A stretch of DNA of 62,987 nt, filler included, from Octopus bimaculoides (GCF_001194135.2; 7 parts of 6 records of this genome joined end to end with filler, not necessarily neighbours in it); one strand, 5' to 3'; shown: positions 3,781 through 22,220, counted from the first letter of the whole stretch. Notes: generated from the sequence alone by a model not told the origin. Numbers and translations are program-made.

Positions 3781-3785
3781 ATAAC

Positions 3786-3868
3786 AAAAAGTATTTGCTG
3801 TCCACGGACCCCCTGTCTTATCCTTGCGGACCCCCTGTGGTCCGCGGACCACAGTTTGAAAACCCCTG
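3786..3868 (-). mobile_element. Terminal fragment of a Charlie-type hAT MITE, same family as 25438-25732
   Basis: Ends in GTTTGAAAACCCCTG (reverse complement of TIR CAGGGGTTTTCAAAC), followed by TTCTAGAA, which fits the NTCTAGAN target consensus. Confidence 0.85.
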
Positions 3869-4484
3869 TTCTAGAAAACTCTTGCTGACTGCTACAAAGC
3901 CATTCGCAAACACAAGGGTTTTTTTTTTTACCAAGGGGCATAACTCTTAACCTAATCCCTTACTCGATTCCTTTCATCGACAAACCGGATGTGTCCCTTC
4001 ACATCCAAGAATAAGAGAAAAGTCGCCATATTTCGTTCCATGACATGACCATAATCTGTCCTTTACCTAACAATCCGTTGAACTCCGACTACGAACACGA
4101 TTGGCAAGATCGGCCGTAATAGATATATAATACATACTGTACACTTCGATTAACATATATATATATATCGAATGCATTAAATGCGCCTCATTATAACTGA
4201 TATAAAATGCTGTGTCATACCAAAACTAGTTGGACAACGTGAAGCAAACAAGCAATTGTTCTTCTCCATCATATAATACGATGAAAAGTTGCTGAGAATT
4301 GGTAAGTGAGGAATATATTGATGTCACAAACAAATATAAGGAATGGTTTCTATGTTTACAACTAATTAATATGGGCGATCTTTTGAAACGAGTCCTAAAT
4401 ATCGGCCTTTTCCGTAAAAAGTGTCTTCGGCGATCTTTACCAAAGATCGCCCTTTTCCTTAACACCCGCACGATCTTCACTACG

Positions 4485-4601
4485 GTGTCAGGGTTAGGGT
4501 TTTAGTGTCAGGGTTAGGGTTTTAGGGTTAGGGTTACGATTACGGTTAGGGACGGAATTCTCTAACCCAAGCCCTAAAACCCAAACCCTAACCGTAAACC
4601 C
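4485..4601. repeat. Degenerate telomeric-like repeats arranged as (TTAGGG)n then (CCCTAA)n
   Basis: GGGTTAGGGTTTTAGGGTTAGGGTTA is followed by CTAACCCAAGCCCTAAAACCCAAACCCTAACC, with GAATTC near the centre. Confidence 0.85.
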
Positions 4602-4679
4602 TTCAAAAGAAATCGTGCTCTCTGTATCTCTTTCGCTTTTACGGTGTCCTTTCCCTCTTTCTCGTTGCAATTAAATTAA

Positions 4680-5275
4680 TATGTTCTGTGTGCAGGAACA
4701 ACAAGCACTAAGAGCATACGGGACTTGGATTCTCTCAAATACCCAGGGGGCTCTTTTGGGGTTGTAGATAGTTTCTCTTACGTAGGTGACCAAATTAGCA
4801 ATGGTGTAGGATGCGCTGAAAGCATTGTTTCTAGAATAAGAATAGGGTGGAGGAAGTTTAGAGAGCTCTGTTGTCAACAAAAGGATTCTCAGAGTGAAAG
4901 GTAGACTGTGTGATGCTTGTGTGCGAACGGCTATACTCCATAGTAGTGAGACGTGGGCTCTGAATGCAGAAGACATGCATAGACTGGAGAGAAATGAAGG
5001 TAGTATGCTCTGTTGGATGTGCAACATCAGTGCACATGTACAACAAAGTGCAAATGTATTGAGAGAAAAGTTGGGCATAAGAGGAGTCAAATGTAGCATG
5101 CAAGAGAGAAGACTATGTTAGTTTGGACATGTGATGCGTATGAATGAGGATAGGTGTATAAAGAAGTGCTGATCACTGAAAGTGGATGGCTCCTGTGGAA
5201 GAGGGAGACTCAGGAAGACGTGAGATGAAGTGGTGAGGACCGATCTCAGGATGTTGGGCCTCACGGAGGAAATGA
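4680..5275 (+). mobile_element. RTE-clade LINE, degraded 3' portion of ORF2
   Basis: KGRLCDACVRTAILHSSETWALNAEDMHRLERNEGSMLCWMC...LREKLGIR...QERRL, followed by a GRGRLRKT-type motif typical of post-RT RTE sequence; contains stops. Confidence 0.9.
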
Positions 5276-5513
5276 GGGATAAAGGTAGATTAGATTTAAA
5301 CAGTCTGTTTATGAAATCTTAGTAGATTTATCATGTCTCTAACACACACCCATAGCAAATTATAGAGGGACCTTTAGAAAGTTGACTGCACTGACAAATG
5401 TCTAACGTATTTGATCAGTTTGATCAAGTACCCAGTAGAAGACAGTAATGACACATTGATATCAACCCTAATTTTCATTTAACTTTTTGTTTCATATTTT
5501 TATCTTCTCAAAG

Positions 5514-5723
5514 GATTCAACGCAATTGGATATAAAGAACCGTAAGCAAATGACACCATTACTTGAAGCTGTCTCCGGGGGTCATATTGGGATGATTCGC
5601 CAGCTGATAGCAAGAGGAGCAGACGTAAATGCTGTTGATGGTAGTGGCAGTAACTGTCTGCACCTTGCTGTGGAGAAAGAGGTGTTTCATTCCGAGGGTG
5701 AAACCCTAAGTATTTTAGACGAG
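5514..5723 (+). CDS. MIB2-like: Internal exon (210 bp, phase 0-0) of a Mind bomb-2-like E3 ligase; ankyrin repeats
   Basis: Polypyrimidine tract with AG at 5512-5513; GTAAGT donor at 5724. Translation DSTQLDIKNRKQMTPLLEAVSGGHIGMIRQLIARGADVNAVDGSGSNCLHLAVEKEVFHSEGETLSILDE contains TPL..A...GH and GADVN..D..G..CLHLA ankyrin motifs. Confidence 0.93.
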
Positions 5724-5959
5724 GTAAGTTTTTAAATTGTTTGTGAATATGTGTAGTGTGTGTGTGTGTGTGTGTGTTTGAGAGAGAAAGAGACGGACAT
5801 TGCATGTCATGCCTCAGTTCACACCCATCAACCCCAACCTCCATTACCATTGAGTAATCCACTCTCTCCTGATAACTTAATTATATTATGTAACTAACTC
5901 CATATCCCTTACACCCTTAAAGACATAGCTCCTCCACCACAGAGAAGATGACCCATCTC

Positions 5960-6540
5960 AGATGTTGGGCATATAAACACAGCCATCACAGAGTGATGGA
6001 GGGGTGACCTACTCAAGATATTCCCAAATGACTGTGATATAGGGTAGAGGAGAGGTGATGCATAGGAATGAGGACAACTGTATAAAGAAGTACTAATCCC
6101 TGAAAGTGGGTGGTACCTGTGGAAGAGAGAGACCCCAGGAAGATGTGGGATGAAGTGGTGAGGACCGATCTCAGGATGTTGGGCCTCACGGAGGAAACGA
6201 CAAGGGACCGAAATGTCTGGCAATGTGAGGTTCTTGGAAAGACCCACCCACATCAGCAAAACTGAGTTCTGGAAATGCTATGTATTCCACCGAATAAAAC
6301 TTTTTGCACACCCTACCCCAACAAACCAAANNNNNNNNNNTGCATAGGAATGAGGACAACTGTATAAAGAAGTACTAATCCCTGAAAGTGGGTGGTACCT
6401 GTGGAAGAGAGAGACCCCAGGAAGATGTGGGATGAAGTGGTGAGGACCGATCTCAGGATGTTGGGCCTCACGGAGGAAACGACAAGGGACCGAAATGTCT
6501 GGCAATGTGAGGTTCTTGGAAAGACCCACCCACATCAGCA
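5960..6540 (+). mobile_element. RTE LINE 3' fragment, present twice across a 10-N gap (about 6061-6330 and 6341-6610)
   Basis: Same GAAGAGAGAGACCCCAGGAAGATGTGGGATGAAGTGGTGAGGACCGATCTC region as the 4680-5275 copy; the two units are essentially identical. Confidence 0.8.
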
Positions 6541-7250
6541 AAACTGAGTTCTGGAAATGCTATGTATTCCACCGAATAAAACTTTTTGCACACCCTACCC
6601 CAACAAACCAAACTACATCTCTTCTCTTCCTCACATTTCCTCTTGCTCCCAAATCTTGTCTTCACTGTATCATTGCTATCCTGTTGTCCCCCATACCGCT
6701 AAGCATTCCGTCCGGCGTGCTAATGTTTCTGCCAGCTTGTCACCTTGTTTCTTTATTAATTATGGAAATATTATTGGTATGTTTAGGATATTTCTGTTTG
6801 GTGTTGGTTTTGTTGTTATGTCTGAAGAAATTGATATGTTGTAGGTGTTCTCTGTTCTGATAACTTACATTGTTTGTTGTTATGTTCATATACAATACAC
6901 TTCCATAAGTATTTCTTTTGGTGTGGCCAGTTGGCTTTATCACACCAGTTGTACAGATAGGATTTTGTTGGCCTGTTGTGTTTCGTATTTTATTCTTGTG
7001 ATGTTTGTTCCATTATATTTCCCATATTTGTGATGAGGCTATCATTTGTTTCATCATCATCATCGTTTAACGTCCGCCTTCCATGCTAGCATGGGTTGGA
7101 CGATTTGACTGAGGACTGGTGAAACCGGATGGCAACACCAGGCTCCAATCTAAATTTGGCAGAGTTTCTACAGCTGGATACCCTTCCTAACGCCAACCAC
7201 TCAGAGAGTTGTGTAATATTCTACTCTATTTTATATTTCATCATTTCTAG

Positions 7251-7426
7251 TGTTGCATTGAACTCAAACTGAACAAGGAAAACAGGCTCTCTGGTGTAAT
7301 AGTCGCTAGTTATCTAGCTCACCAGGGAGCCAGCTTTTATCATATGAACAACAAGAACGAAACCCCATTGGACCTCATCAAGAATCGAAATTTGAAAGAA
7401 AACTTACGAACGTTTTTACTATCCCG
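7251..7426 (+). CDS. MIB2-like: Internal exon (176 bp, phase 0-2) of the MIB2-like gene; last ankyrin repeat
   Basis: TTTCTAG acceptor; GTAAGT donor at 7427. Translation CCIELKLNKENRLSGVIVASYLAHQGASFYHMNNKNETPLDLIKNRNLKENLRTFLLS(R) resembles the recalled MIB2 segment VACFLALEGADVSYTNHRGRSPLDL. Confidence 0.9.
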
Positions 7427-7475
7427 GTAAGTATTCACTGGCAATGACAAGATGGACCAGTACATACCCTCTCTT

Positions 7476-7704
7476 TACTCTTTTATTTGTTTCAGTCATT
7501 TGACTGTGGCCATGCTGGAGCACCGCCTTTTTTAGTCGAGAGAATCGACCCCAATTCTTATTCTTTGTAAGCCTAGTACTTATTCTATCGGTCTATCTTT
7601 TGCCGGACCGCTAAGTTACGGGGACGTAAACACACCAGCATCAGTTGTCAAGCGATGTTGGGTGGACAAACACAGACACACAAACATATACATACATACA
7701 TACA

Positions 7705-7757
<53 letters not shown>

Positions 7758-8082
7758 CATCATCATCATCGTTTAACGTCCGCTTTCCATGCTAGCATGG
7801 GTTGGACGATTTGACTGAGGACTGGTGAAAACCAGATGGCTACACCAGGCTCCAATCTGATTTGGCAGAGTTTCTACAGCTGGATGCCCTTCCTAACGCC
7901 AACCACTCAGAGAATATATATATACATATATACGACAGGCTTCTTTCAGTTTCCATCTACCGAATCCACTCACAAGGCTTTGGTCGGCCCGAGGCTATAG
8001 TAGAAGACACTTGCCCATGATGCCACGCAGTGGGACTGAACCCAGAACCATGTGGTTGGTAAGCAAGCTACTTACCACACAG
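7476..8082 (-). mobile_element. Long tRNA-head SINE with an internal (TA/CA)n microsatellite; other copies at 10825-11536(-), 14998-15372(-), 43480-43665(+, partial), 45812-46203(-), 60360-60520(+, partial), 60650-61020(-)
   Basis: Shared sense sequence TGTGTGGTAAGTAGCTTGC...GGTTCAGTCCCACTGCGTGGCACCTTGGGCAAGTGTCTTC...GGTGCTCCAGCATGGCCACAGTCAAATGACTGAAAC, with a B-box-like GGTTCAGTCCC. Confidence 0.88.
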
Positions 8083-9817
8083 TCCATGTTTATATGTTTG
8101 TTTTTAGATCCCTATCATTCTACAGATGTGATTCTCTAGGGCATAGTATGTTATCCTGGTACTGTGACTATTTCATTTCAACTGAGAATGAGCAACATAA
8201 ACCCTTTTTTATATAAATTAGGGTCTTGCACTAATTGCAGATAGCTTCACCAGAGTTCGTTTATGCAGCAGAGAAAGGCTTTGGTGAAGTGGAGATAGAT
8301 AACATCTACCCATGGGCCACTGTCTGTGATTTAGGCTGATGTCCTCAAGAAGTTCTAGGAGTCAGCTACAGCATCTGGAGTTAGGGATAAATCCAAATTC
8401 TGAGGGTTGAATAAGGTTATGTGAGTTACAGATTTTTCAAAGTATCTCTTTCTCTCTCACATAGAAGACCATAAATTTGGTGAGGCAGTTAGTGAAGCCC
8501 TTTTACAAGCGCTCTCCAGGATCAAATTAGCTTATATCATCATCATGATTTAACGTCCGCTTTCCATGCTAGCATGGGTTGGACGATTTGACTGAGGACT
8601 GGTGCAACCGGATGGCTACACCAGGCTCCAAATATATGTATANNNNNNNNNNNNNNNNNNNNNNNNNNNNNNNNNNNNNNNNNNNNNNNNNNNNNNNNNN
8701 NNNNNNNNNNNNNNNNNNNNNNNNNNNNNNNNNNNNNNNNNNNNNNNNNNNNNNNNNNNNNNNNNNNNNNNNNNNNNNNNNNNNNNNNNNNNNNNNNNNN
8801 NNNNNNNNNNNNNNNNNNNNNNNNNNNNNNNNNNNNNNNNNNNNNNNNNNNNNNNNNNNNNNNNNNNNNNNNNNNNNNNNNNNNNNNNNNNNNNNNNNNN
8901 NNNNNNNNNNNNNNNNNNNNNNNNNNNNNNNNNNNNNNNNNNNNNNNNNNNNNGGTGGCACATAAAACACACCATTTTGAGCGTGGCCGTTGCCAGAACC
9001 GCCTGACTGGCCTTCATGTGGGTGACACGTAAAAGCACCCACTACACTCTCGGAGTGGTTGGCGTTAGGAAGGGCATCCAGCTGTAGAAACTCTGCCAAA
9101 TCAGATTGGAGCCTGGTGTAGCCATCCGGTTTCACCAGTCCTCAGTCAAATCGTCCAACCCATGCTAGCATGGAAAGCGGACGTTAAACGATGATGATGA
9201 TGATGATGATGATGATTGATATATATATATATATATACACACAACACACGCACATATACATGCATGTGTGAGTCACTCAAGCACAAGTCTGTCTGTATGT
9301 AATTGTATATCTTTAGAGTAGCATTGTAGGGTAGGTGTGAGAGGTAGGATCTGGCTGGTTTGAGTGTAAAACAGGTAGAATATTTGGGCCGGATATGGCC
9401 GGTTTAAATGCTAAAGGGTTAAAGAAGAATTTGTGACGTTTTCTTGCTGGTCTCTGTAATGTCTTGTTATATTCTGTACTGTAAACATGTACACAATGTA
9501 ATCATCATCATCATCATCATCATTGTTTAACGTCCGCACCAGGCTCCAATCTAATTTGGCAGAGTTTCTACAGCTGGATGCCCTTCCTAACGCCAACCAC
9601 TCAGAGAGTGTAGTGGGTGCTTTTACGTGTCACCCGCACGAAAACGGCCACGCTCGAAATGGTGTCTTTTATGTGCCACCCGCACAAGAGCCAGTCCAGG
9701 GGCACTGGCAACGATCTCACTCGAAAATCCTACGGGAGCCAGTCAGGCGGTACTGGCAACGGCCCGTGTTATAAACGAATGTTATTGGTGAGGTGTATTT
9801 CTGTTTTTTTTGTACAG

Positions 9818-9966
9818 GTTACCGTGTCTGTTTTGTGAAGATAAAGAGGCCACCATAACCTTCCATCCATGTGGACATTGTGTGTTGTGTTTGGAATGCT
9901 GTCCAAAACGTCTACCTAGGCGATGCCTCAAATGCCGGCAACCTGTATCTGGCAGAAGTGGATTTG
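9818..9966 (+). CDS. MIB2-like: Internal exon (149 bp, phase 2-1) of the MIB2-like gene; RING finger
   Basis: T-rich TACAG acceptor; GTGAGA donor at 9967; in frame with the previous exon. Translation LPCLFCEDKEATITFHPCGHCVLCLECCPKRLPRRCLKCRQPVSGRSGF is a MIB/IAP-type C3HC4 RING (C..C...PCGH...C..C...C..C). Confidence 0.93.
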
Positions 9967-11340
9967 GTGAGAATACTATTTAATGATCTGTCTGTTTGTC
10001 TCGTTGACTTTATGGTGTAGAATATCATCATCATCATCATCATCTTCGTTTAACGTCCGCTTTCCATGCTAGCATGGGTTGGACGATTTGACTGAGGACT
10101 GGTGAAACCAGATGGCTGCACCAGGCTCCAATCTGATTTGGCAGAGTTTCTACAGCTGGATGCCCTTCCTGACGCCAACCACTCAGAGAGTGTAGTGGGT
10201 GCTTTTACGTGTCACCCGCACGAAGGCCAGTCAGGCGGTACTGGCAATGGCCACGCTCAAAATGGTGTATTTTACGTGCCACCTGCACAGGAGCCAGTCC
10301 AGTGGTACTGGCAACGATCTTGCTCAAATGTCTTTACACGTGTCACCGGCACAAGTGCCAGGAAGGCGACGCTGGGCACTGGTGCTGTCACGATTTCGCT
10401 TATGTACTTTATTTTGTTGTGTAGATTCTGATCTGGCAGATTTATGATAAAAGTTGTCTTAGGTGTCTTTTTTTCTGTGATAGTAAATCTGTCACTACAT
10501 CTGTTAGACTTTATCCAAGCAAGAAAACCAGTCACAATTCAGGAAAGTATTGTCTGAAACATGTGACTAATGAATGATACTGTAACATAAATGGTGACTA
10601 GCAGAAACATCTCCCATTTTACAGTTGGCGGCGAGTGATTAGAGGTGATTAATGATTTATCAGTGTCTGGGTAAGCTGGTAATTAAAGTCAGTGGGACTT
10701 ACAAGAACACCAATGTCTGCTTTGGTAAAGTGGGAGATTGGATCAGAAAATCCCAACTGAGTGTTTAAGGACCAACATTAGCAAGCCTGGGAGTTGAATC
10801 AGGTGTTTTGTTTATATTGGTAATTCTTTTACTCTTTTACATGTTTCAGTCATTTGACTGCGGCCATGCTGGAGCACCGCCTTTTCACTCGAGCTAATCG
10901 ACCCCAGGACTTATTCTTTGTAAGCCTAGTACTTATTCTGTCGGTCTCTTTTTGCCGAACCGTTAAGTTACGGGGATGTAAACACACCAGCATCGGTTGT
11001 CAAGTGATGTTGGGGGGAACAAACACAGACACACAAACATATACACACATATACATCATCATCATCATCATCATCGTTTAACGTCCGCTTTCCATGNNNN
11101 NNNNNNNNNNNNNNNNNNNNNNNNNNNNNNNNNNNNNNNNNNNNNNNNNNNNNNNNNNNNNNNNNNNNNNNNNNNNNNNNNNNNNNNNNNNNNNNNNNNN
11201 NNNNNNNNNNNNNNNNNNNNNNNNNNNNNNNNNNNNNNNNNNNNNNNNNNNNNNNNNNNNNNNNNNNNNNNNNNNNNNNNNNNNNNNNNNNNNNATCTCG
11301 CTCGAAAATCCTACGGGAGCCAGTCAGGCGGTACAGCTGG

Positions 11341-11383
<43 letters not shown>

Positions 11384-11946
11384 TACAACCGGCTTCTTTC
11401 AGTTTCTGTCTACCAAATCTACTCACAAGGCTTTGGTCGGCCCGAGGCTATGGTAGAAGACACTTGCCCCAAGGTGCCACGCAGTGGGACTGAACCCGGA
11501 ACCATATGGTTGGTAAGCAAGGTACTTACCACACAGACACGTCCTCCAGAAATTCTTCATGATTTTTCATTTATGAAGATCTCAAATAGTTTGCTGTTTG
11601 ATATGAGATGTCATCTATTGTTGAGGTCTGTACTCAGACTGTCAGAAAAGATTATATGCTGTAGCAATCAATAACCAAAGATAATTGCAGCGTTTTTACA
11701 TTATGTCGGATGTCTTAATAGAGAGAGAGGAGGTTTAGGAAGGTTAGTCTATTCTGTTGAGGAACTAAATATTGAGCTATTATATAGTACCACTGTAGAA
11801 AGTGTGACAATGCTGTACCAAACCACAGTGGTCACCAGTTGACCATTGATGATAGGAATGTCTCCTCACAGTAATCGAATACAGATAATTAATAAAGATG
11901 AAGAAATGTTACTTCAAAGTGTAAAACTTGGAAATGTTTATTTCAG

Positions 11947-11997
11947 AGGGTCCAAAGTTGTCTGACAAGGAAGTCCAAACGGCGGCAGAGCCAGGTG
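11947..11997 (+). CDS. Predicted 51-bp linker micro-exon (phase 1-1), (E)GPKLSDKEVQTAAEPG
   Basis: TTTATTTCAG acceptor and GTGAGT donor at 11998. Phase matches the RING exon and the exon is homologous to the 14891 exon. No transcript evidence. Confidence 0.68.
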
Positions 11998-12239
11998 GTG
12001 AGTACAAAATAAGTGTACATAACTATGTTAGTCCACAGAACTCCAAAAGGAACATAGGGGTGGTTTCCTGGTCCCTCTGGCATAGGTATATTCCTCACTG
12101 GATGGGACGCTGCTTCATGACAGAATTACCTATTTTCACAAGCTGAGTGGGCTGGGGCATTGTGAAATAAAAGTGTTTTGCTCAAGAACACAATACATTG
12201 CCCAGTCCAGGAATTGAAACCACAATCTAATAATCATAG

Positions 12240-13070
12240 CAGTGACTCGGCTATCAGAGCAAGGTCATCAGCATAGAGAAGCTCCCAGGGGCAGCCTATT
12301 TTGAATTCCTCTGTTATTGCCTGGAGGACTATGATGAATAAAAGGGGGCTGAGAACTGATCCTTGGTGAACCCCTACTTCTACCCAGAAGTCTTGACTAT
12401 ACTCGTTGCCTTACTGACAGCATCCCTGTACAGGTCTTACCAACCACTCGTCTATCCCCAGCTTCTGCATTGACCACCAGATAAAGGATATGGGGACCTT
12501 GTCAAAGGCTTCTCCAAGTCAACAAAAGACAAGTACAGAGGTTTATCTTTGGCTAGGTATTTCTCCTGCAGTTGCCTTACCAGAAATATAGCATCAGTGG
12601 TGCTTCTGCCTGGCACAAAACCAAACTGCATCTCACCTAGGCTAACTCTCTCCCTAATTAGTTAGGCTATGACCCTTTCTGAAACTTTCATCACCTGATC
12701 CAATAATTTGATGCCCCAATAGTTATTTCTATCTAAAGCATCACCTTTACTTTTGTAGCAGCTGACTATGGTGCTGCTACACCAGTCATTGGGTATGACT
12801 CCTTCATGAACTACCTGATTTACGATGTGGGTGACAAGACCATAACCTACATCGCCTGATATTTTAAGCATCTCAGGGGTTATTCCTGATGGGCCAGGTG
12901 CTTTCCCTGTCTTCATATCCTTAATTGCTGTATCTACCAAGGTACTGTTGATTTGGGTAGCTGGTCCCTCTACTGGGTCAACATTTGGCAGACTCTCCTC
13001 CTCCTATTCATTCTCCACATTCAGCAGTCTTTTTATAATGGCATCTCCAAGCCTCTTCCTTTGCAGAATC
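12240..13070 (-). mobile_element. RTE-clade LINE reverse-transcriptase fragment
   Basis: MKTGKAPGPSGITPEMLK...VIPNDWCSSTIVSCYKSKGDALDRNNYWGIKLLDQVMKVSERV covers the RT N-terminal motifs; the QFGF-like and F.DLEKAFD-like segments follow, with stops. Confidence 0.92.
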
Positions 13071-13084
13071 ATTGGATCTAGTTC

Positions 13085-13267
13085 AAAACGGGGGCGCCAG
13101 TATTTTCTTAACGAAACACTTTGAAACTTGGGACACTGGTAGAATGTGTCATATAAAACATCTTTTTCTTTTAGTCTTCTTAAGAAAAATTATTATATTG
13201 CAACTTATTTCATGTTAAATTTGTCGTATTTCTGTAATTTCAACCAATCACTGACGTCCATTCAGCC
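13085..13267 (+). mobile_element. Terminal-inverted-repeat arm of the same foldback family as 25828-26694, inside an intron of the MIB2-like gene
   Basis: ACGAAACACTTTGAAACTTGGGACACTGGTAGAATGTGTCATATAAAACATC...TTTCAACCAATCACTGACGTC matches 25864-26010. Confidence 0.8.
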
Positions 13268-14030
13268 NNNNNNNNNNNNNNNNNNNNNNNNNNNNNNNNN
13301 NNNNNNNNNNNNNNNNNNNNNNNNNNNNNNNNNNNNNNNNNNNNNNNNNNNNNNNNNNNNNNNNNNNNNNNNNNNNNNNNNNNNNNNNNNNNNNNNNNNN
13401 NNNNNNNNNNNNNNNNNNNNNNNNNNNNNNNNNNNNNNNNNNNNNNNNNNNNNNNNNNNNNNNNNNNNNNNNNNNNNNNNNNNNNNNNNNNNNNNNNNNN
13501 NNNNNNNNNNNNNNNNNNNNNNNNNNNNNNNNNNNNNNNNNNNNNNNNNNNNNNNNNNNNNNNNNNNNNNNNNNNNNNNNNNNNNNNNNNNNNNNNNNNN
13601 NNNNNNNNNNNNNNNNNNNNNNNNNNNNNNNNNNNNNNNNNNNNNNNNNNNNNNNNNNNNNNNNNNNNNNNNNNNNNNNNNNNNNNNNNNNNNNNNNNNN
13701 NNNNNNNNNNNNNNNNNNNNNNNNNNNNNNNNNNNNNNNNNNNNNNNNNNNNNNNNNNNNNNNNNNNNNNNNNNNNNNNNNNNNNNNNNNNNNNNNNNNN
13801 NNNNNNNNNNNNNNNNNNNNNNNNNNNNNNNNNNNNNNNNNNNNNNNNNNNNNNNNNNNNNNNNNNNNNNNNNNNNNNNNNNNNNNNNNNNNNNNNNNNN
13901 NNNNNNNNNNNNNNNNNNNNNNNNNNNNNNNNNNNNNNNNNNNNNNNNNNNNNNNNNNNNNNNNNNNNNNNNNNNNNNNNNNNNNNNNNNNNNNNNNNNN
14001 NNNNNNNNNNNNNNNNNNNNNNNNNNNNNG

Positions 14031-14078
14031 AGATTCCAAAGTCTGGAGAGAAAGTCCCAAAGACATCACAGAATGTTG
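14031..14078 (+). CDS. Predicted 48-bp linker micro-exon (phase 1-1), (E)IPKSGEKVPKTSQNV
   Basis: GTAAGT donor at 14079. The acceptor lies mostly in the N gap (only G14030 is visible). Aligns codon by codon with the 11947 exon (CCA AAG..TCT..GTC C.A). Confidence 0.55.
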
Positions 14079-14274
14079 GTAAGTGTAAAATAACAGCAGC
14101 TAATTGATCTCTATAAACTTTACCTGCAGGTGGGGCATAATTTGTTTGTGAGAATGACAAAGGACAGGTTCCATGCCTGTATTTCAATTGAACAGTTAGC
14201 TGTAAAGTGATATCTATTAAAGATATTGATATTACTGAAATATCATAAAATATCCACTGAGATAACATAAGAAG

Positions 14275-14620
14275 CATCAGTAGTGGTGTGCAAGAGAGAC
14301 GATTGCGTTGGTATGGGCATGTGGCGAGAATGGAGGAGGATAGCTGTGTGAGAAAGTGCCACACCCTAGCAGTTGAGGGAACCTGTGGAAGAGGTAGGCC
14401 CAGGAAGACCTGGGATGAGTTGGTGAAGCACGACCTCCGAACATTGGGCCTCACCGAGGCAATGACCTCTGACCGAGACCTTTGGAAATATGCTGTGCAT
14501 GAGAAGACACGGCAAGCCAAGTGAGACCTAAATCCAAAGCCTCTACCAGGATGCGTTTCTGCCTACATTGGACACTAAACTCCGCTTGCGAAGACCTGTT
14601 GAGGCAAGTGAAATCGAATT
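14275..14620 (+). mobile_element. RTE LINE 3' end
   Basis: QERRLRWYGHVARMEEDSCVRKCHTLAVEGTCGRGRPRKTWDELVKHDL is a canonical RTE C-terminus. Confidence 0.92.
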
Positions 14621-14890
14621 AAATGACATAATTGCAACGTTGTTAGATTATGTAGGATGCCTTAATAGAGAGAGAGGGGGGGATATAGGAAGGTTGGTCT
14701 GTTTTGTTGTGGACCTAAATATTGAGCAGTTATGTGGGACCATGATAGAAAGTAAAATGTTGACCAAAATCATAGTGGTCACCAGTTGACCATTGATGAT
14801 AGGAATGTCTGACAGTAATAAACTATAGATTATTTATAGAGAGAAGGAAATTTTACAGTAAATTATAAAACTTGGAACTATTTATTTCAG

Positions 14891-14962
14891 AGAGTTCAAA
14901 AGTGGAGGAACAAGATCTCCTGAGAGTGGCTAAGAATTTAGGAACTAACTGGTGGCAAGTGG
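14891..14962 (+). CDS. Predicted 72-bp exon (phase 1-1) encoding the N-terminal helices of a death domain, (E)SSKVEEQDLLRVAKNLGTNWWQV(G)
   Basis: TTTATTTCAG acceptor and GTGAGT donor at 14963. DLLRVAKNLG..W..VG matches the death-domain start pattern L..lA..LG.dW..La. Downstream exons are lost at the 15373 join. Confidence 0.75.
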
Positions 14963-15956
14963 GTGAGTATACCTTAGCAACACCCGATTTATTTCCCTTT
15001 TACTCTTTTAGTTGTTTCAGTCATTTGACTGTGGCCATGCTGGAGCACCGCCTTTAGTCGAGCAAATCGACCCCAGGACTTATTCTTTGGAAGCCTAGTA
15101 CTTATTCTATCGGTCTCTTTTTCCGAACCGCTAAGTTACAGGGACGTAAACACACCAGCATCGGTTGTCAAGCGATGGTGGGGGGACAAACACAGACACA
15201 CAAACATATACACACACATACACATATATACGACGGGATTCTTTCAGATTCCGTCTACCAAATCCACTCAGAAGGCTTTAGTTGGAGTGAAGCTACAGTA
15301 GAAGATACTTGCCCAAGGTGCCACGCAATGGGACTGAACCCGGAACCATGTGGTTGGGAAGCAAGCTACTTGNNNNNNNNNNNNNNNNNNNNNNNNNNNN
15401 NNNNNNNNNNNNNNNNTTAATTAATTAANNNNNNNNNNNNNNNNNNNNNNNNNNNNNNNNNNNNNNNNNNNNTCTTCTTCTTCTTCTTCTTCTTCTTCTT
15501 CTTCGCCACCTCCATTATCTACTACCACTGCTGCTTAAACAATCAAAGACAAGAATTCATATCAAACTAACTGCTGCTAATTACCTAGAACCCACAAGAG
15601 TGAAAAAAAGAGACAGAGACAGACTGAAAAAAGGAAAATGTCCCTTGCATTTGAAAACTATGGAAATATTTTTAAAAAAACATTTCATTTAATTTTTCCA
15701 CAATTGTTTTTCATGCTTTACTTTAAGTTCAAAAAGTCGCAAAGACTGAAACCAGTACTAAAATGTTCTTCATGATAAAATTATTTTAGAATTTTCTTCC
15801 TTGTCTTATTTTCCTTATACATATCAACTCGTGTGTTCCTTTTCAACCTTCTACATATATATTTTTTTTTATTTTCATTCTCTTTGAAATTGCTTTTATC
15901 CGTGGTTTGGGTTTTAACTGCCCTTTCTAGCATGTACAGTGTCCTGTCTTTGTATA

Positions 15957-15990
<34 letters not shown>

Positions 15991-16607
15991 ATACATACTC
16001 ATTTGTTTCATTGGTAGTATGTGGGACATAATATATACAGACCAGATTTAGCACTAGAAGGCAGGGGCCAAAAACACCGTTGATATTTAAATCAGTTTAT
16101 TTGCCATTCCTTGCGTAGGTCTCAGTAATGCATTTTAATAAACGCTGCACGAACAATACATCAAGTGCACCTCTCACTGGAGGAATTTAGAAGATACATT
16201 AGAAAACAAATTCACTGATGAAATTTATAAGAAAAAGTAAAAGTGAGAATAAGATGAAGCTTAAAAGATAAAATAAGCGATCAATTAATTTACACTAGTA
16301 ATTGACAGGCATCAAGTTTCGTTTATAACAGTTGATTTTATAACAGTTTTAAGATTGAAATATAAATTAGCATACGTGACTTCACGGAATAAATGCTATC
16401 GTCAGAATTGTTAACATCAGAAATACGATTTGAGATCATCAATAAATAAGTACGTGCAATAGTTGTCAGCATAAATTAGAATTTTATTATAAAAGATAAG
16501 AATAAATACATAAGTAATGAAATTAAGTTTGGACGATGTGACACACAGATGTTCAGGTATTTACACTTATAAATTCCTTTTACACAAAACAAGTAATACA
16601 TAAATCT

Positions 16608-16814
16608 TGGCTTCAAGTTTTTGCACAAGGCCAGCAAATTCAGAGGGGAGTTAAGTCGATTACCTCGACCCCAGTGTTCAACTAGTACTTATTTTATCAA
16701 CCCTGAAAGGATGAGCAGCGAAGTCGACAGAATTAGATCTCAGAACGTAAAGACGGACCAAATATCGCTAAGCACTTTGCCTGGAGTGCCAACGATTCTG
16801 CCAGCTCGCCGCCT
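16608..16814 (-). mobile_element. Short (about 200-230 bp) tRNA-type SINE; other copies at 20140-20350(-), 22571-22802(-), 33968-34135(+), 34206-34420(+), 48412-48622(-), 49190-49390(-, partial), 55830-55960(+), 56104-56280(+)
   Basis: Shared sense sequence AGGCGGCGAGCTGGCAGAA.CGTTAGCAC.CCGGG.GAAATGCTTAGCGG...GAGTTCAAATTCCGCCGAGGTCGACTTTGCCTTTCATCCTTTCGGGGTCGATAAA with a B-box-like GAGTTCAAATTCC. Confidence 0.88.
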
Positions 16815-16967
16815 TAAATTATACATAAATATTAACATCAATAGATTTAGACAGATACATGCATAAACTCAAATACATTCCTTTATATTCCACAGACACA
16901 TGTCCTTCCTTATATTCCACATATTACACACGTCCTTCTGTACTTCAACTGCAATGTATGTATGTAT

Positions 16968-17351
16968 CAGGGACGTGCCGCTTGGGTAGGCAAGGTAGGC
17001 AGTGCCTAGCCTGAATGAAATAGATCGATAGTAACATTTTCTTTTTATGGCAAAATATACACCTAATTCGATAAAATTATGAAAGTTACCCTGACTATTT
17101 TATTTTTTTGTAGATTAGGTAGGCATAATTCGCCCCTGCCTTTCAGTCTCAGTATTAAAACTACGCATAGTAGTGCTGTAGTACACGTTTTGCGTACATT
17201 CCTACAACAACGTTTTCTTTATACGCTATAAAGGCAGAAGTAAATCTGCCTCCAACTCAGTTGAGCACCTGTGTTTCGCTTAATTTTTTTGTTTTACTAC
17301 ATAAACGTCACCAACTGCCTACCCTGAGTAATTACTCACGGCACATGCCTG
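16968..17351. mobile_element. Complete 384-bp hAT MITE
   Basis: TIRs CAGGGACGTGCCG and CGGCACATGCCTG (11/13 match); 8-bp TSD GTATGTAT on both sides (16960-16967, 17352-17359). Confidence 0.88.
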
Positions 17352-17757
17352 GTATGTATGTATGTATTGCTTGTATGAGCGTGTGTATTCGTGTTATGCT
17401 GCTTGCCCGTGGGCGTTTATACATCCATATCGGTTAACGGTTATTTTCAATACTTTTCTCGCTGGATTAAGTGTTCGTTTCCCTTTTTGTCTTCTGCAAC
17501 TTTATTTTTGGATCTTCTTGTATCTTTACTTGTGGGGCTACACAAAACAAACCTCGCACACTGGATGACTTGAAGACACGGATTCATGAGGTTCTCAATG
17601 AAATCCCTTCAGAAGGTTGTTCATTCCAACTCTGACCGTTTGGGGAAACTGGTTGACTCCACCGATCCTCACATTGAAATATGAAGATTTACTTTTATTT
17701 TCCAATGTAATAAAGAACATTTGTTTCAATAAATTTGTAAAAGGAATATAGATTTTA

Positions 17758-17968
17758 CATTATTTACATTATTTACAATTGACGGATATTTTTCCTCGTC
17801 ATGTTTGTTGTTAACACAACGTTTCGGCTGATATACCCTCCAGCCTTCATCAGGTGTCTTGGGGAAGGTATATCAGCCGAAACGGTATGTTAACAACAAA
17901 CAAAATGACAAATATCCGTCAATTGTAAATAATGTACATAATTCCTAATCTCTTAAATACAGAACTGT
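17758..17968. mobile_element. 211-bp hairpin-forming PLE-type mini-element carrying a hammerhead motif
   Basis: 13-bp direct repeat AATATAGATTTTA at 17745-17757 and 17969-17981; inverted arms at about 17762-17838 and 17866-17937. Confidence 0.8.
17814..17857 (-). ncRNA. Minimal type-I hammerhead ribozyme motif
   Basis: Minus strand reads ACAC CUGAUGA A GGCUG-(10 nt)-CAGCC GAAAC GUU GUGU. Helix I is ACAC/GUGU, helix II is 5 bp, and helix III is the palindrome ACGU (dimer type). Confidence 0.8.
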
Positions 17969-18348
17969 AATATAGATTTTATTACCAATTTTTAATGCCT
18001 ACTTACTTTTCACCAGCCCTATAGTACAAACACAAGCGAAGCACAACAGGATCACAACTAAATCACATTCTAAATAACCTACAGTAATATGTTTATATGC
18101 TTCACTAAACTAACTACAACAACATTTCTTAGGCATGACCCTCTGCACTTCTAGCAATCAGAATTACATGACAAACCACTTCTAACTCTCTCCTGACTAT
18201 CTTTGCATCATTATCATAAAATACTTACACATCAATGTACAATATAAAAATACTCTCACAAACTTAAAAAATGCCCTGAGAAACCACTCCCATTAGTAAA
18301 CAGAATTATGTTTCATAGAAATGAACACTATATTAGACACTGTTATAT

Positions 18349-18742
18349 TGTTGTTTTTGTTGTTGGCACTCCGTCGCTTACGACGTCGAGGGTTCCAGTT
18401 GATCCGATCAACGGAACAGCCTGCTCGTGAAATTAACGTGCAAGTGGCTGAGCACTCCACACACACGTGTACCCTTAACGTGGTTCTCGGGGAGATTCAG
18501 CGTGACACAGTGTGACAAGGCTGACCCTTTGAATTAGAGGCACAACAGAAACAGGAAGAAAGAGTGAGAGAAAGTTGTGGTGAAAGAGTACAGCAGGGTT
18601 CGCCACCATCCCCTGCCGGAGCCTCATGGAACTTTAGGTGTTTTCGCTCAATAAACACTCACAACGCCCGGTCTGGGAATCGAAGCCGCGATCCTATGAC
18701 CGCGAGTCCGCTGCCCTAACCACTGGGCCATTGCGCCTCCAC
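18349..18742 (-). mobile_element. Approximately 390-bp tRNA-derived SINE with (CAA)n tail, full length
   Basis: A box TGGCCCAGTGG and a B-box-like sequence (here GGCTTCGATTCCC; GGTTTCGATTCCC in the other copies); 12-bp TSD ACACTGTTATAT (18337-18348, 18743-18754). Confidence 0.93.
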
Positions 18743-20503
18743 ACACTGTTATATATCAACAAAGGATCCCTCTAAAAAAATCGTACTCAACAACGCAATA
18801 TACAAAAATACAGTGTTGATTACACAACTGAAATAACCAACTGATAACATCTGGAAATAAGCTCAGCCATAACATGAATAAACTCAACACCAAAAAACAA
18901 GAAACAAAGAAATAAAAGAGATCAACCATTCTGTTCATAAATCACATCATAAATCGCAAAATAAACAATTAAATACGGTATAGAAAAATAGCAACGTTTC
19001 AGCAGAAACATTACCACAACCCGTATCATAATAATAACAGGAAATAACATACATGCACTCAACAGAAAGCGAACTCGTTTATTAGGCATCTTTCGAAAAC
19101 CATTTCCCCAAGCACTGCACAAAGAAAACAAGCAAAATATAAAATAACTATTTTCCATCATGACTTCTATCTTAACTTCTTCCTTCTGTCAGACGTAAGT
19201 AATGCTCTATGGAAAACACGAAACTTGGAACTTTAGGGTCACAAATATACGTGTAAATTTCGCCGCTTCCTCAGTAGTTTGTACACTGAAGGTAAATTTG
19301 CTAGCTTTGCGTTCCATCCATCCTTTTCCCTCAGGTCCAGGAACCAGATATTCCAGACACTAACCCAGATTTCAAGATCTGGTGAGAACGGAATCCGTAA
19401 CCCTGGGGAAGATGGTGGCCCGTTTCAAGTACTGTCAGCAGGCGACAGCTCAGCCTAGGAATGCATAAGATAAGGTCATCACGTCCTTTTGTTATGACTG
19501 AAGTCATTGTGGCCACGTGCTACATGTGCTGTAAGGAGATCAGTAAGAACCTCTCTCGAGTGGAAGCCAAAGGAATCATTGAACAATTATTCAAACCAGC
19601 ACTGCCAAATTTACAGAAACTAGAATGATTACCATCGATTGCAAAAGTTCCAACTCCATACTCTGCCTCCTACTTATAAACAAAATACTTAACAACATTC
19701 GTGAGACAATACGCAAAATGCTAGCAAACAACCTGTCAAGTTGTCGTGCTTAAGCAGTGTAGAAACTAATATTACTAGGATCAGTAATTTCCCGAACATC
19801 AAGTAATACAACCAGCCACCACTACAAACAACATAAATATACCACATACGCGCGCGCGCACACACACGTTATATGAAAATACTAAAAACTACATACAATA
19901 TCTCTACAACATTCACAGCATACATAGAATACATTGTAAATGAATCAGATCATTACACAAACATATTTCTAAAACTTACACGTACCACATTTGGACACCG
20001 CAAAGATACAGCATTAGTATACAAACAATAGGGAAGTCTCCATTTTCCAGGTTACAAACTACATTAAACTATAGAGAACATGAAACGACGTAATTTGTGT
20101 TATATATATTGCGCTAAAAACACAGATTCTCTTACGATTCTTTTCTACTCTAGGCACAAGGCCCGAAATTTTGGGGGAGGGAGCTAGTCAATTAGATCGA
20201 CCCCAGTACGCAACTGGTACTTAATTTATCGACACCGAAAGGATGAAAAATAAAGTCGAACTCGGCTGAATTTGAACTCAGAACGTAAAGACAGAAGAAA
20301 TACCGCAAAGCGTTACGCCCAGCGTGTTAACGTTTCTGCCAACTCGCCAACATACTACAAAAATATTGGCAGACGAGGAACACAGTTTGTTACTGACACT
20401 TGATCGAAACTTCACAGTCTATATCACTACAAATACAATCACACCAAACACTAATACAATATCCCGGAATATAACTACAACATCATTCTAATATTCTTTC
20501 GCT

Positions 20504-22220
20504 TGTAGTAACGCCGTGTGCATGCGTAGTCTCACGCATGCGTGGAATTGAACAACCAAGCTTTCCCGCTTTGATCGATCTCTTTCTTACTGGCCAGCGA
20601 TTGAGCAAGGACGTGTCTAGCTGTCTCTCCATCTTCCGAACTCACGCTAGACAGCTCACATCAATATACCAACGTCCCAACAACCATGTTCTGACACACC
20701 GAAGACGTCTCAACAAACAAGATTAAAGATGTATATAACTTTCCACCATGAATAAATATTGTTTGTGTTGATAGTCTGGAGTTCAGCGTTCCGTTCAATT
20801 CCTAATTNNNNNNNNNNAGCTACAATAACCACCACACACATACCTATAAAGTGGTGACCCCCCCCCCCGACGTGATTCAAACACGCAGCCCGCTGAGCTA
20901 CAATAACCACCACACACATACCTATAAAGTGGTGACCCCGAGTACGAACAACTGCAGCATGGATTCTGGACTACCAACCTATAACTGGTGACCCCGACTA
21001 CAGAACAAATGCGGCCATGGAGACTGAACTACCAAGCAACGATGACCACCAACGTCACCAACATCTCCAACCATAGTCAACACGACTTACTATGTACACC
21101 AAACTAAACCACCGCGGCAAATCTCTCTCTTCGATTCTGTTAGGTGACTTAGCTTCACCACGATAATAAACAGACAAGAATTACAGCCTGCGATACTTCC
21201 AATTGTGTACTCAAGAACTTGGTATAAAACTCTCACGTGTACTGACTTTCTATCTGCTGTNNNNNNNNNNNNNNNNNNNNNNNNNNNNNNNNNNNNNNNN
21301 NNNNNNNNNNNNNNNNNNNNNNNNNNNNNNNNNNNNNNNNNNNNNNNNNNNNNNNNNNNNNNNNNNNNNNNNNNNNNNNNNNNNNNNNNNNNNNNNNNNN
21401 NNNNNNNNNNNNNNNNNNNNNNNNNNNNNNNNNNNNNNNNNNNNNNNNNNNNNNNNNNNNNNNNNNNNNNNNNNNNNNNNNNNNNNNNNNNNNNNNNNNN
21501 NNNNNNNNNNNNNNNNNNNNNNNNNNNNNNNNNNNNNNNNNNNNNNNNNNNNNNNNNNNNNNNNNNNNNNNNNNNNNNNNNNNNNNNNNNNNNNNNNNNN
21601 NNNNNNNNNNNNNNNNNNNNNNNNNNNNNNNNNNNNNNNNNNNNNNNNNNNNNNNNNNNNNNNNNNNNNNNNNNNNNNNNNNNNNNNNNNNNNNNNNNNN
21701 NNNNNNNNNNNNNNNNNNNNNNNNNNNNNNNNNNNNNNNNNNNNNNNNNNNNNNNNNNNNNNNNNNNNNNNNNNNNNNNNNNNNNNNNNNNNNNNNNNNN
21801 NNNNNNNNNNNNNNNNNNNNNNNNNNNNNNNNNNNNNNNNNNNNNNNNNNNNNNNNNNNNNNNNNNNNNNNNNNNNNNNNNNNNNNNNNNNNNNNNNNNN
21901 NNNNNNNNNNCATGCGTAGTCTCACGCATGCGTGGAATTCAACAACCAAGCTTTCCCGCTTTGATCGATCTCTTTCTTACTGGCCAGCGATTGAGCAAGG
22001 ACGTGTCTAGCTGTCTCTCCATCTTCCGAACTCACGCTAGACAGCTCACATCAATATACCAACGTCCCAACAACCATGTTCTGACACACCGAAGACGTCT
22101 CAACAAACAAGATTAAAGATGTATATAACTTTCCACCATGAATAAATATTGTTTGTGTTGATAGTCTGGAGTTCAGCGTTCCGTTCAATTCCTAATTTAA
22201 TATAGGAAAGTCAGGTGTAC
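20504..22220 (+). mobile_element. Small, probably non-autonomous Gypsy-type (CsRn1-like) LTR element; LTR1 about 20504 to at least 20807, LTR2 from at most 21911 to about 22220
   Basis: About 287-bp direct repeats with one visible mismatch. LTR1 starts TGTAG; a TATA-like GTATATAA, then AATAAA and a GT-rich tract lie inside the repeat; three TGGTGACCCC PBS motifs lie just inside. Gaps hide both inner LTR ends and no TSD was found. Confidence 0.6.

What the first reader, a model, noticed from the sequence alone, without database searches (positions are those of the whole stretch)
11680..14970. Linker built from degenerate tandem duplicates of the death-domain first exon (micro-exon array)
Seen: about 265 bp of intron upstream of exon 11947 (about 11680-11946) aligns with the intron upstream of exon 14891 (about 14628-14890), including ACCAGTTGACCATTGATGATAGGAATGTCT and the TTTATTTCAG acceptor. 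The 51-, 48- and 72-bp exons all start with AG, are all phase 1-1, and align codon by codon; the 11947 copy fits a 21-nt deletion. Inference: a segment holding the first death-domain exon was duplicated at least twice and the copies were kept as in-frame spacer exons. Because they are symmetric they could be skipped combinatorially, tuning RING-to-death-domain distance. More copies may lie in the 760-N gap.
Basis: partly seen in the sequence, partly recalled or inferred. Interest (0 to 1): 0.7.

Follow-up and report, generated by a model that had tools for sequence, protein, structure and literature searches.

The report
Duplicated small exons form protein linker
In an octopus gene for an ankyrin-RING-death-domain protein, the spacer between the RING and the death domain is encoded by two small in-frame exons that are old tandem copies of the segment carrying the first death-domain exon; this is a clean but ordinary example of a protein linker grown by exon duplication.

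Summary
The piece is Octopus bimaculoides chromosome CM046630.1, gene XP_014780589.2. RefSeq calls it 'MIB2', but it is an ankyrin-RING-death-domain protein.

The intron repeat is real: 11681-11956 matches 14628-14900 at 79.6% (E 4e-66). The three exons (51, 48 and 72 nt) are all phase 1-1, and RefSeq joins them directly. Two caveats apply. Within the window only m1 and m2 align above chance as exons. The m2 acceptor is hidden in the gap, with only the g at 14030 visible.

Seven related octopus loci settle the origin. The same ~265-nt upstream flank and a conserved donor-side flank bracket every linker exon and every first death-domain exon. They always lie on the sense strand and occur nowhere else in 431 kb, so this is not a dispersed transposon. 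The ancestral unit was about 500 bp and is now spread apart by retroelement insertions.

The array predates the family's expansion. Paralogues carry 0-6 cassettes, and some copies are dead through splice-site mutations. One paralogue has a young 166-bp array. RefSeq isoforms of an O. sinensis paralogue use four cassettes in nearly every combination.

Splicing in this particular gene and the content of the gap remain untested. This is a new member of a known kind, of moderate to low interest.

The parts
9818..9966 (+). RING exon (context). It ends in phase 1 and is the upstream partner of the cassette array.
   Evidence: Translation. Pfam zf-C3HC4_3 at P0078 residues 263-306, 32.5 bits.
11680..11946 (+). 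Upstream intron flank of unit 1. It contains a (GA)n stretch, the core AGTGGTCACCAGTTGACCATTGATGATAGGAATGTCT and the acceptor tgtttatttcag.
   Evidence: 82% identical to 14628-14890. 70-78% identical to the flanks of linker and death-domain exons in L002-L009.
11947..11997 (+). Cassette exon m1: 51 nt, phase 1-1, encoding EGPKLSDKEVQTAAEPG, donor GTG|gtgagt.
   Evidence: Included in RefSeq P0001. Best exon match is Osin6_ua at 72%, z = 10.
11998..12237 (+). Downstream intron flank of unit 1. It is collinear with the flank of the 51-nt cassette in locus L006.
   Evidence: Window 11681-12237 aligns to L006 20668-21174, 70% over 557 nt.
12241..13267 (.). Two dispersed repeats inserted in the intron. 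12241-13073 is retroelement-like with a weak antisense reverse-transcriptase ORF. 13072-13267 is a second repeat.
   Evidence: Non-collinear hits in L002-L007 on both strands. RVT_1 E = 0.029, below threshold.
13268..14029 (.). Assembly gap. By analogy with the other units it should hold the upstream flank and acceptor of m2.
   Evidence: Its content is unknown.
14030..14078 (+). The last visible acceptor base (g at 14030) plus cassette exon m2 at 14031-14078: 48 nt, phase 1-1, encoding EIPKSGEKVPKTSQNV, donor TTG|gtaagt.
   Evidence: The exon start is homologous to the 48-nt unit u3 of L002, L004 and L007, where this base is a (caa, a dead acceptor). z = 7-8 against u3 and against m1.
14079..14261 (+). 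Downstream intron flank of unit 2. It is homologous to the donor-side flank of death-domain exon 1 and of cassettes in the paralogues.
   Evidence: 70-74% identical to L006 23394-23572, L005 26640-26822, L004 53849-54000, L003 18095-18268 and L007 44027-44178.
14265..14624 (+). Retroelement 3' fragment inserted at the junction of units 2 and 3. Without it the m2-to-m3 period is about 500 bp.
   Evidence: Dispersed hits on both strands. Related copies in the window at 5076-5275 and 6059-6330. ORF ending ...GRGRPRKTWDE....
14628..14890 (+). Upstream intron flank of unit 3, with the acceptor tatttatttcag.
   Evidence: 75-80% identical to the flanks of death-domain exon 1 in L002, L004, L006, L007, L008 and L009.
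14891..14962 (+). Exon m3: 72 nt, phase 1-1, the first death-domain exon, encoding ESSKVEEQDLLRVAKNLGTNWWQV. The first ~7-8 codons are linker and helix 1 follows.
   Evidence: Pfam Death at P0078 352-424, equal to P0001 207-279, 29.5 bits. 76-77% identical to death-domain exons of paralogues, z = 12-14.
14963..14997 (+). Remnant of the downstream flank of unit 3, cut short by a SINE at 14998-15371.
   Evidence: 60% identical to the m2 flank, z = 3.3. The SINE has many copies in every locus.

Best explanation
The region is the linker-coding part of an Octopus bimaculoides gene for an ankyrin-repeat / single RING / death-domain protein. Exons m1 (51 nt), m2 (48 nt) and m3 (72 nt, the first death-domain exon) are three members of an old head-to-tail array. 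Each unit was about 500 bp: roughly 265 nt of intron 3' end with its own polypyrimidine tract and acceptor, a phase 1-1 exon whose length is a multiple of three, and roughly 185 nt of intron 5' end with its own donor.

The array arose by tandem duplication of the unit carrying death-domain exon 1. Unequal recombination or replication slippage is the inferred mechanism. This happened before the family radiated, and the array was inherited by this gene. Retroelement insertions later pushed the units apart.

The upstream copies lost the helix-1 coding constraint and shortened. They now encode a Glu/Lys/Pro/Ser-rich segment of 33 residues that is predicted to be unstructured and that spaces the RING from the death domain.

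Every unit carries its own splice sites and is symmetric, so any subset can be spliced in without changing the frame. Copy number and inclusion can therefore change the spacer length, both over evolution and through alternative splicing.

Shown here: the repeat, the exon phases, the homology of the flanks across the family, the variation in copy number, the dead copies, and the isoform models in paralogues. Inferred: the duplication mechanism, the disordered-spacer function, and alternative splicing in this particular gene.
For: - The repeat is real and unique within the region.
- All exons are phase 1-1 and all subsets stay in frame.
- RefSeq XP_014780589.2 and the older .1 model both join m1-m2-m3.
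- The same upstream and donor-side flanks bracket every linker exon and every death-domain exon 1 in L002-L009. They are always on the + strand and always end at an acceptor.
- The m2-to-m3 period is 860 bp, which is about 500 bp plus a 360-bp retroelement fragment.
- Intermediate exon forms of 78, 72, 57, 51 and 48 nt exist. The 72- and 78-nt copies keep the 'A(K).LG' motif.
- m1-type and m2-type exons recur in other paralogues.
- The tree of the flanks is star-like, and m1 does not pair with m3.
- The family has 0-6 cassettes.
- L008 holds a young 166-bp array with 5.9 copies at 94% identity.
- Dead copies show donor GT>CT, acceptor cag>caa or a frameshift.
- Fourteen RefSeq isoforms of one O. 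sinensis gene use cassettes a-d as none, a, b, c, d, ab, ac, ad, bc, bd and cd. O. bimaculoides paralogues have isoforms that differ by one 17-18-residue cassette.
- In the AlphaFold model, residues 162-201 have pLDDT 29-35 and no secondary structure, and the death-domain helices start at 206.
Against: - Within the window, the exon bodies of m1 and m2 do not align with m3 above chance (z of about 2.5). Homology to the death-domain exon therefore rests on the flanks and on family intermediates.
- The m2 acceptor and upstream flank are unread because they lie in the gap.
- No RNA data could be examined. Inclusion of m1 and m2 rests on the RefSeq models alone. The paralogue isoforms are computed models whose full-length combinations may not all exist.
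- The structure model is poor overall (mean pLDDT 53, 8-sequence alignment), so 'disordered' is weak evidence.
- Only 431 kb of a genome I know to be in the gigabase range was surveyed for stray copies of the element.
Confidence: 0.85

Rival explanations
1. The 265-nt similarity is a dispersed transposon, such as a MITE or SINE, that inserted twice and supplies a splice acceptor. The small exons would then be exonised transposon sequence rather than duplicates of a gene segment.
For: The window is dense with SINE and LINE fragments. The similarity stops about 10 nt into the exons.
Against: In 431 kb from nine octopus loci the element is found only directly upstream of linker exons or death-domain exon 1. 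It is always in the sense orientation and always ends at the acceptor. The donor-side flank is also homologous between units. True transposons in the same loci show 10-30 hits on both strands.
Confidence: 0.03
2. The repeat reflects a recent event private to this gene: either a fresh duplication of the m3 unit or gene conversion between the two introns. It would not be an inherited array.
For: The m1 and m3 flanks are 78-82% identical, slightly above most comparisons between paralogues (64-78%). They share a 37-nt perfect run.
Against: The m1 exon body and its derived downstream flank match the 51-nt cassette of L006 rather than m3. The neighbour-joining tree does not pair m1 with m3, and m3 sits with other death-domain units. 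The 37-nt core is nearly the same in Osin6_DD and L009, so it looks ancestral. The exon bodies are far more diverged than the flanks, which argues against a recent whole-unit copy.
Confidence: 0.08
3. m1 and/or m2 are dead duplicates that the gene predictor threaded into the model. The real mRNA would join the RING exon directly to m3.
For: No transcript data were available here. Several homologous units in paralogues are demonstrably dead. One O. vulgaris / O. sinensis paralogue has a model with no cassette (P0008, P0080).
Against: m1 has a strong acceptor and donor and an open frame. m2 has a strong donor, an open frame and the diagnostic g at 14030 that is mutated in the dead u3 copies. Both RefSeq versions include them. 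Lengths that are multiples of 3 are kept across paralogues.
Confidence: 0.1
4. The upstream element is kept similar by selection because it is itself functional, for example as an intronic splicing regulator or a small RNA gene such as an intronic snoRNA. On this view the duplicates are only a by-product.
For: A 37-nt perfect core containing TGATGA lies about 90-125 nt upstream of the acceptor. The element is as conserved as the coding exons between paralogues.
Against: No Rfam family matches the element, even at E = 10. Other introns of these paralogues align at 65-70% as well, so the element is not exceptional. The core varies among units. In units u2 and u3 of L002 and L004 only about 60-100 nt of the element remains alignable, yet u2 of L002 is still used.
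Confidence: 0.05

Closest known systems
Tandem exon duplication in general, for example the 54-bp exon arrays of fibrillar collagen genes (from my own knowledge)
   Same: Small exons whose lengths are multiples of three, all in one phase, generated by repeated tandem duplication of an exon with its flanking intron. They are retained additively to lengthen a repetitive protein segment.
   Different: Here the source exon is the start of a globular domain (death domain), and the copies have lost that coding role. There are only 2 copies in this gene and 0-6 in the family. The flanking intron homology is still visible.
Titin PEVK exons (from my own knowledge)
   Same: Tandemly duplicated, symmetric small exons that encode a disordered Pro/Glu/Lys/Val-rich spacer. 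Differential inclusion sets the length of that spacer.
   Different: Titin has about a hundred such exons and a demonstrated mechanical function. Here the spacer sits between an E3 RING and a death domain, the function is inferred, and splicing in this gene is untested.
Mutually exclusive tandem-duplicated exons (substitution events; PMC9741552, PMC8373072 listed; Dscam1 from my own knowledge)
   Same: The origin is tandem exon duplication, the duplicates share phase, and alternative splicing acts on them.
   Different: Those duplicates replace one another, with exactly one included. Here the copies are additive cassettes: the RefSeq model of this gene includes all of them, and paralogue isoforms include 0, 1, 2 or more.
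Schistosome micro-exon genes (MEGs) (from my own knowledge)
   Same: Runs of short symmetric exons whose combinatorial skipping yields in-frame protein variants.
   Different: In MEGs the micro-exons make up most of a secreted protein. Here they form only a linker inside an intracellular multidomain protein, and the exons are larger (48-78 nt).
Mind bomb E3 ligases MIB1/MIB2 (the RefSeq name of the gene)
   Same: Ankyrin repeats followed by a C-terminal C3HC4-type RING (PF13920).
   Different: No MIB/HERC2, ZZ or Mib-repeat domains were found. There is a single RING, and a C-terminal death domain that MIB proteins lack. The name reflects partial similarity only.

Membership tests
Tandem exon-duplication array | Neighbouring exons in the same orientation with homologous flanking intron sequence on both sides | tested here: met
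   The upstream flanks of m1 and m3 are 82% identical. The donor-side flank of m2 is homologous to the flanks of death-domain exon 1 and of cassettes in paralogues. The upstream flank of m2 is unreadable because of the gap.
Tandem exon-duplication array | The exon bodies themselves are homologous | tested here: inconclusive
   m1 vs m2 gives z = 7. m1 or m2 vs m3 gives z of about 2.5 within the window. Paralogue exons give z of 4-7 for some cassette / death-domain pairs, and the 72- and 78-nt copies keep the 'A(K).LG' motif.
Tandem exon-duplication array | Same intron phase and lengths that are multiples of three, so copies can be added or removed in frame | tested here: met
   51, 48 and 72 nt, all phase 1-1, and all subsets keep an open frame. 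All intact units in paralogues are 48, 51, 57, 72 or 78 nt.
Dispersed transposable element | Copies scattered in unrelated genomic contexts and in both orientations | tested here: not met
   Across 431 kb of nine loci the element is found only beside linker exons or death-domain exon 1, on the sense strand. A whole-genome search was not possible.
Cassette (skippable) alternative exons | Transcripts exist both with and without the exon | not testable with these tools
   There are no RNA data for this gene, and only one RefSeq isoform. In paralogues, RefSeq isoform models differ by whole cassettes. This is annotation-level evidence only.
Mutually exclusive tandem exons | Exactly one member of the array is included per transcript | tested here: not met
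   P0001 contains m1, m2 and m3 together. Paralogue isoforms contain from 0 to at least 2 cassettes.
Microexons in the strict sense (3-27 nt, as in PMC13174390 listed) | Exon length of 27 nt or less | tested here: not met
   m1 is 51 nt and m2 is 48 nt. They are small exons and would count as 'micro' only under the looser limit of 51 nt or less, which I know from memory.
Death domain (Pfam PF00531) | A profile match above the curated threshold that starts in exon m3 | tested here: met
   P0078 residues 352-424, 29.5 bits against a cut-off of 22.6. Residue 352 corresponds to P0001 residue 207, inside m3 (residues 200-223).
Mind bomb (MIB1/MIB2) E3 ligases | N-terminal MIB/HERC2 and ZZ domains, Mib repeats and multiple C-terminal RINGs | tested here: not met
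   The Pfam scan of the longest model, P0078, finds only Ank families, one zf-C3HC4_3 and Death.

The most novel reading that the evidence does not exclude
The cassette array could be a regulated length and sequence diversifier in an Octopus-specific, rapidly expanding family of death-domain E3 ligases. Tissue- or stimulus-specific inclusion of 0-6 cassettes would set the RING-to-death-domain distance and so determine which partners of a death-domain signalling complex are ubiquitinated. Some cassettes in paralogues carry CPxC every 17 residues and could bind metal. Birth and death of cassettes would give the family an evolvable 'ruler', and the unit has also been moved into an LRR-GPCR-like gene.
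Probability: 0.15. Interest if true: 0.6.

Novelty: new member of a known kind. Interest (0 to 1): 0.35.

Why it matters
This is a well-preserved example of how a protein linker can be built from a domain's own first exon. The intron flanks still show the duplication. Paralogues capture every stage: full-length copy, shortened cassette, a young 166-bp re-amplification, and copies killed by single splice-site mutations. Annotated isoforms in paralogues suggest that the cassettes are used combinatorially. The case is useful as a teaching or benchmark example for exon-duplication detection, and for annotating this octopus-specific ankyrin-RING-death-domain family, which RefSeq mislabels as MIB1/MIB2. 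It does not reveal a new mechanism.

Tried and rejected
- **snoRNA or other ncRNA in the conserved core.** The Rfam scan of 11500-15372 at E up to 10 gave nothing in the element, only four sub-threshold chance hits elsewhere.
- **Special selective constraint on the element.** Other introns of the paralogues align at 65-70% too.
- **Recent gene conversion between m1 and m3.** The tree is star-like and the core looks ancestral.
- **Filling the gap.** Assembly version 2 keeps the same 762 N. No orthologue above 53% protein identity was found in O. sinensis or O. vulgaris. L006 is collinear at m1, but its middle unit is reduced to a 76-nt remnant next to a SINE.
- **Transcript evidence.** The 90% cluster of P0001 holds no member derived from a run assembly. 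P0006 and P0008 had no record as non-longest isoforms.
- **A 78-nt-type unit between the RING exon and m1.** None was found. There is only RING-downstream intron, SINEs and a 198-N gap.
- **Identity of the 12241-13073 insert.** Pfam gave only a weak RVT_1 hit, E = 0.029.
- **Structure.** The model was too poor (pLDDT 53) to justify a fold search.
- **Literature.** Two searches found nothing on this family or array.


Full report
**Source and gene.** The piece 3577-15372 is identical to Octopus bimaculoides assembly GCA_001194135.2, chromosome CM046630.1. Window coordinate + 4451 gives the coordinate in locus L001. It carries part of the gene for RefSeq XP_014780589.2 (P0001, 287 aa; the older model P0078 has 432 aa), which RefSeq names 'E3 ubiquitin-protein ligase MIB2'. 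The exons in the piece are:
- two ankyrin exons, 5514-5723 and 7251-7426;
- a RING exon, 9818-9966;
- m1, 11947-11997 (51 nt);
- m2, 14031-14078 (48 nt);
- m3, 14891-14962 (72 nt).

Pfam finds ankyrin repeats, one zf-C3HC4_3 RING and a death domain. The death-domain match scores 29.5 bits against a cut-off of 22.6. It starts at P0001 residue 207, inside m3. No MIB/HERC2 or ZZ domain is present, so the MIB name reflects partial similarity only.

**Gap test.** The 762-N gap (13268-14029) is unchanged in assembly version 2. It lies within the intron between m1 and m2 and ends one base before m2. The acceptor and upstream flank of m2 are therefore unread, apart from the g at 14030. The sequence to the left of the gap (13072-13267) is a dispersed repeat. 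Continuity cannot be tested. The frame across the gap depends only on whether an unseen exon lies inside it. Both RefSeq versions join m1, m2 and m3 directly.

**The observation.**
- A self-comparison of 11541-15372 yields one significant repeat: 11681-11956 vs 14628-14900, 79.6% over 279 nt, E 4e-66.
- A global alignment of the two flanks gives 82% identity and z = 72.
They sit within a 37-nt perfect match.
- All three exons start with AG, are multiples of three and are phase 1-1. Every subset is in frame.
- As exons, only m1 and m2 align above chance (67%, z = 7). Each against m3 gives z of about 2.5.
- The nucleotide similarity between the m1 and m3 units ends about 10 nt into the exon.

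**What it is.** I fetched eight further octopus loci:
- five O. sinensis paralogues (L002, L004, L005, L006, L008);
- one O. bimaculoides paralogue (L003);
- one O. vulgaris paralogue (L007);
- one O. bimaculoides LRR-GPCR-like gene with a C-terminal death domain (L009).

The ~265-nt element recurs in all of them, 1-4 times per locus. It is always on the sense strand and always ends at a ...tatttatttcag acceptor. It always sits in front of either a small phase-1 exon or death-domain exon 1. It occurs nowhere else in 431 kb, apart from microsatellite and LINE-tail fragments at the edges of the queries. The donor side is also conserved between units (gtgagtataaaataacagtacctaattgatttctataaatttta...). 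For m2 this homology runs about 185 nt.

The repeated unit is therefore about 265 nt of intron, an exon, and about 185 nt of intron. In the window the m2-to-m3 distance is 860 bp. That equals one 500-bp unit plus a 360-bp retroelement fragment (14265-14624) inserted at the junction. The m1-to-m2 interval is swollen by two other repeats and the gap. This rules out the dispersed-transposon reading as far as it can be tested here.

**Direction and age.**
- The exons in these units form a length series: 78 nt (death-domain exon plus 6 nt), 72, 57, 51 and 48 nt. The 72- and 78-nt copies still encode the 'A(K).LG' motif of helix 1. This fits derivation from death-domain exon 1 followed by shortening.
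- m1 belongs to the 51-nt type. Its best match is the cassette of L006 (72%, z = 10), with which it also shares a derived downstream flank.
- m2 belongs to the 48-nt type, unit u3 of L002, L004 and L007 (z = 7-8).
- A neighbour-joining tree of the upstream flanks is star-like. m1 does not pair with m3, and m3 sits weakly with other death-domain units.
- Other introns of the paralogues align at 65-70%, so the element needs no special constraint to explain its conservation. Rfam finds nothing in it.

The array is ancestral to the family and is not a private event of this gene.

**Dynamics in the family.** An exhaustive profile search found 129 relatives with E below 1e-3. The nine closest that I looked up are all Octopus proteins, and the tenth, a weak death-domain-only hit, is from Branchiostoma.
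- Their linkers hold 0 to 6 cassettes, for example 6 x 17 residues in P0088 and 5 in P0086.
- L008 contains a young array with a 166-bp period: 5.9 copies at 94% identity, each a 51-nt exon plus a 115-nt intron. One copy has been killed by a deletion and loss of its donor.
- L002 has lost the donor of unit 1 and L004 the donor of unit 2 (GT>CT). The L004 loss explains the read-through isoforms P0006 and P0083.
- Unit 3 has a cag>caa acceptor in L002, L004 and L007. The window has g at the homologous base.

**Splicing.** No RNA data for this gene were reachable. At the annotation level:
- fourteen RefSeq isoforms of one O. sinensis paralogue use four cassettes as none, a, b, c, d, ab, ac, ad, bc, bd and cd;
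- three of those isoforms also use an alternative acceptor inside the death-domain exon;
- two O. bimaculoides paralogues have isoforms that differ by one 17-18-residue cassette.

However, these are computed models, and the evidence does not extend to the window's gene.

**Function.** m1 and m2 encode 33 residues rich in Glu, Lys, Ser and Pro. In an AlphaFold model that is poor overall (mean pLDDT 53), residues 162-201 have pLDDT 29-35 and no secondary structure, while the death-domain helices begin at residue 206. The most likely role is a flexible spacer between the RING and the death domain. This is an inference.

**Verdict.** The phenomenon belongs to a well-known class, tandem exon duplication that lengthens a repetitive or disordered segment, with collagen and titin PEVK as analogues from my own knowledge. 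The exons are already in RefSeq models. Two literature searches found no description of this family or array. I rate it a new member of a known kind, with interest of about 0.35.

Noticed in passing
L008 13394-14370: A young tandem array with a 166-bp period: 5.9 copies at 94% identity, each a 51-nt cassette exon plus a 115-nt intron. It encodes near-identical VCPKSE[DE]KAVQAVVESV repeats. The fifth copy (about 14072) has a deletion and a lost donor and is skipped in the RefSeq model.
   Followed up: yes
L002 33128-33210 and 35786-35840; L004 46459-46540 and 49120-49175: Two very similar O. sinensis loci have lost donors reciprocally (GGTGAGT>GCTGAGT). Unit 1 is dead in L002 and unit 2 is dead in L004. 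In L004 this produces read-through isoforms that end without a death domain (P0006, P0083).
   Followed up: partly
L009 89293-89470 and 92806-93155: An O. bimaculoides LRR / 7TM (GPCR-like) gene on another chromosome ends with the same element, death-domain exon 1 and donor flank. This is preceded by a linker exon with the same acceptor context, whose '...TSQ...' motif is amplified into (STSQQ)n. It looks like exon shuffling of the unit into another gene architecture.
   Followed up: partly
Proteins P0088, P0096 and its isoforms: In some paralogues each 17-residue cassette starts with CPxC (ECPRCREKTVKTVAESF repeated), giving CPxC-x13-CPxC spacing. This could be a metal-binding module rather than a plain spacer. 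The window's cassettes have no Cys.
   Followed up: no
window 6059-6330 and 6341-6612: Two 272-nt copies that are 100% identical, separated by a 10-N gap. This is almost certainly an assembly artefact (overlapping contig ends that were not merged) and not a biological duplication.
   Followed up: no
L001 1-8746 vs 10001-22001 (window piece starts at L001 8028): The version-2 annotation splits the former 432-aa model (P0078) into a 154-aa 'PP6 ankyrin subunit-like' gene (P0077) and the 287-aa P0001. The split lies at a 5-kb assembly gap, so it is probably an annotation artefact.
   Followed up: partly
window 4498-4601: Telomere-like (TTAGGG)-type repeats arranged as an inverted pair (39-nt arms, 82% complementary, 26 nt apart), inside the piece upstream of the first ankyrin exon at 5514.
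   Followed up: no
window 7474-8082, 10825-11091 with 11341-11540, and 14998-15371: Three copies of the same SINE-like element (TTTACTCTTTTA..CAGTCATTTGACTG.GGCCATGCTGGAGCACCGCC...). It is present 20-30 times in the other octopus loci. One copy truncates the downstream flank of m3. A weak, sub-threshold mir-2843 Rfam hit (15184-15255, minus strand) lies inside it.
   Followed up: partly
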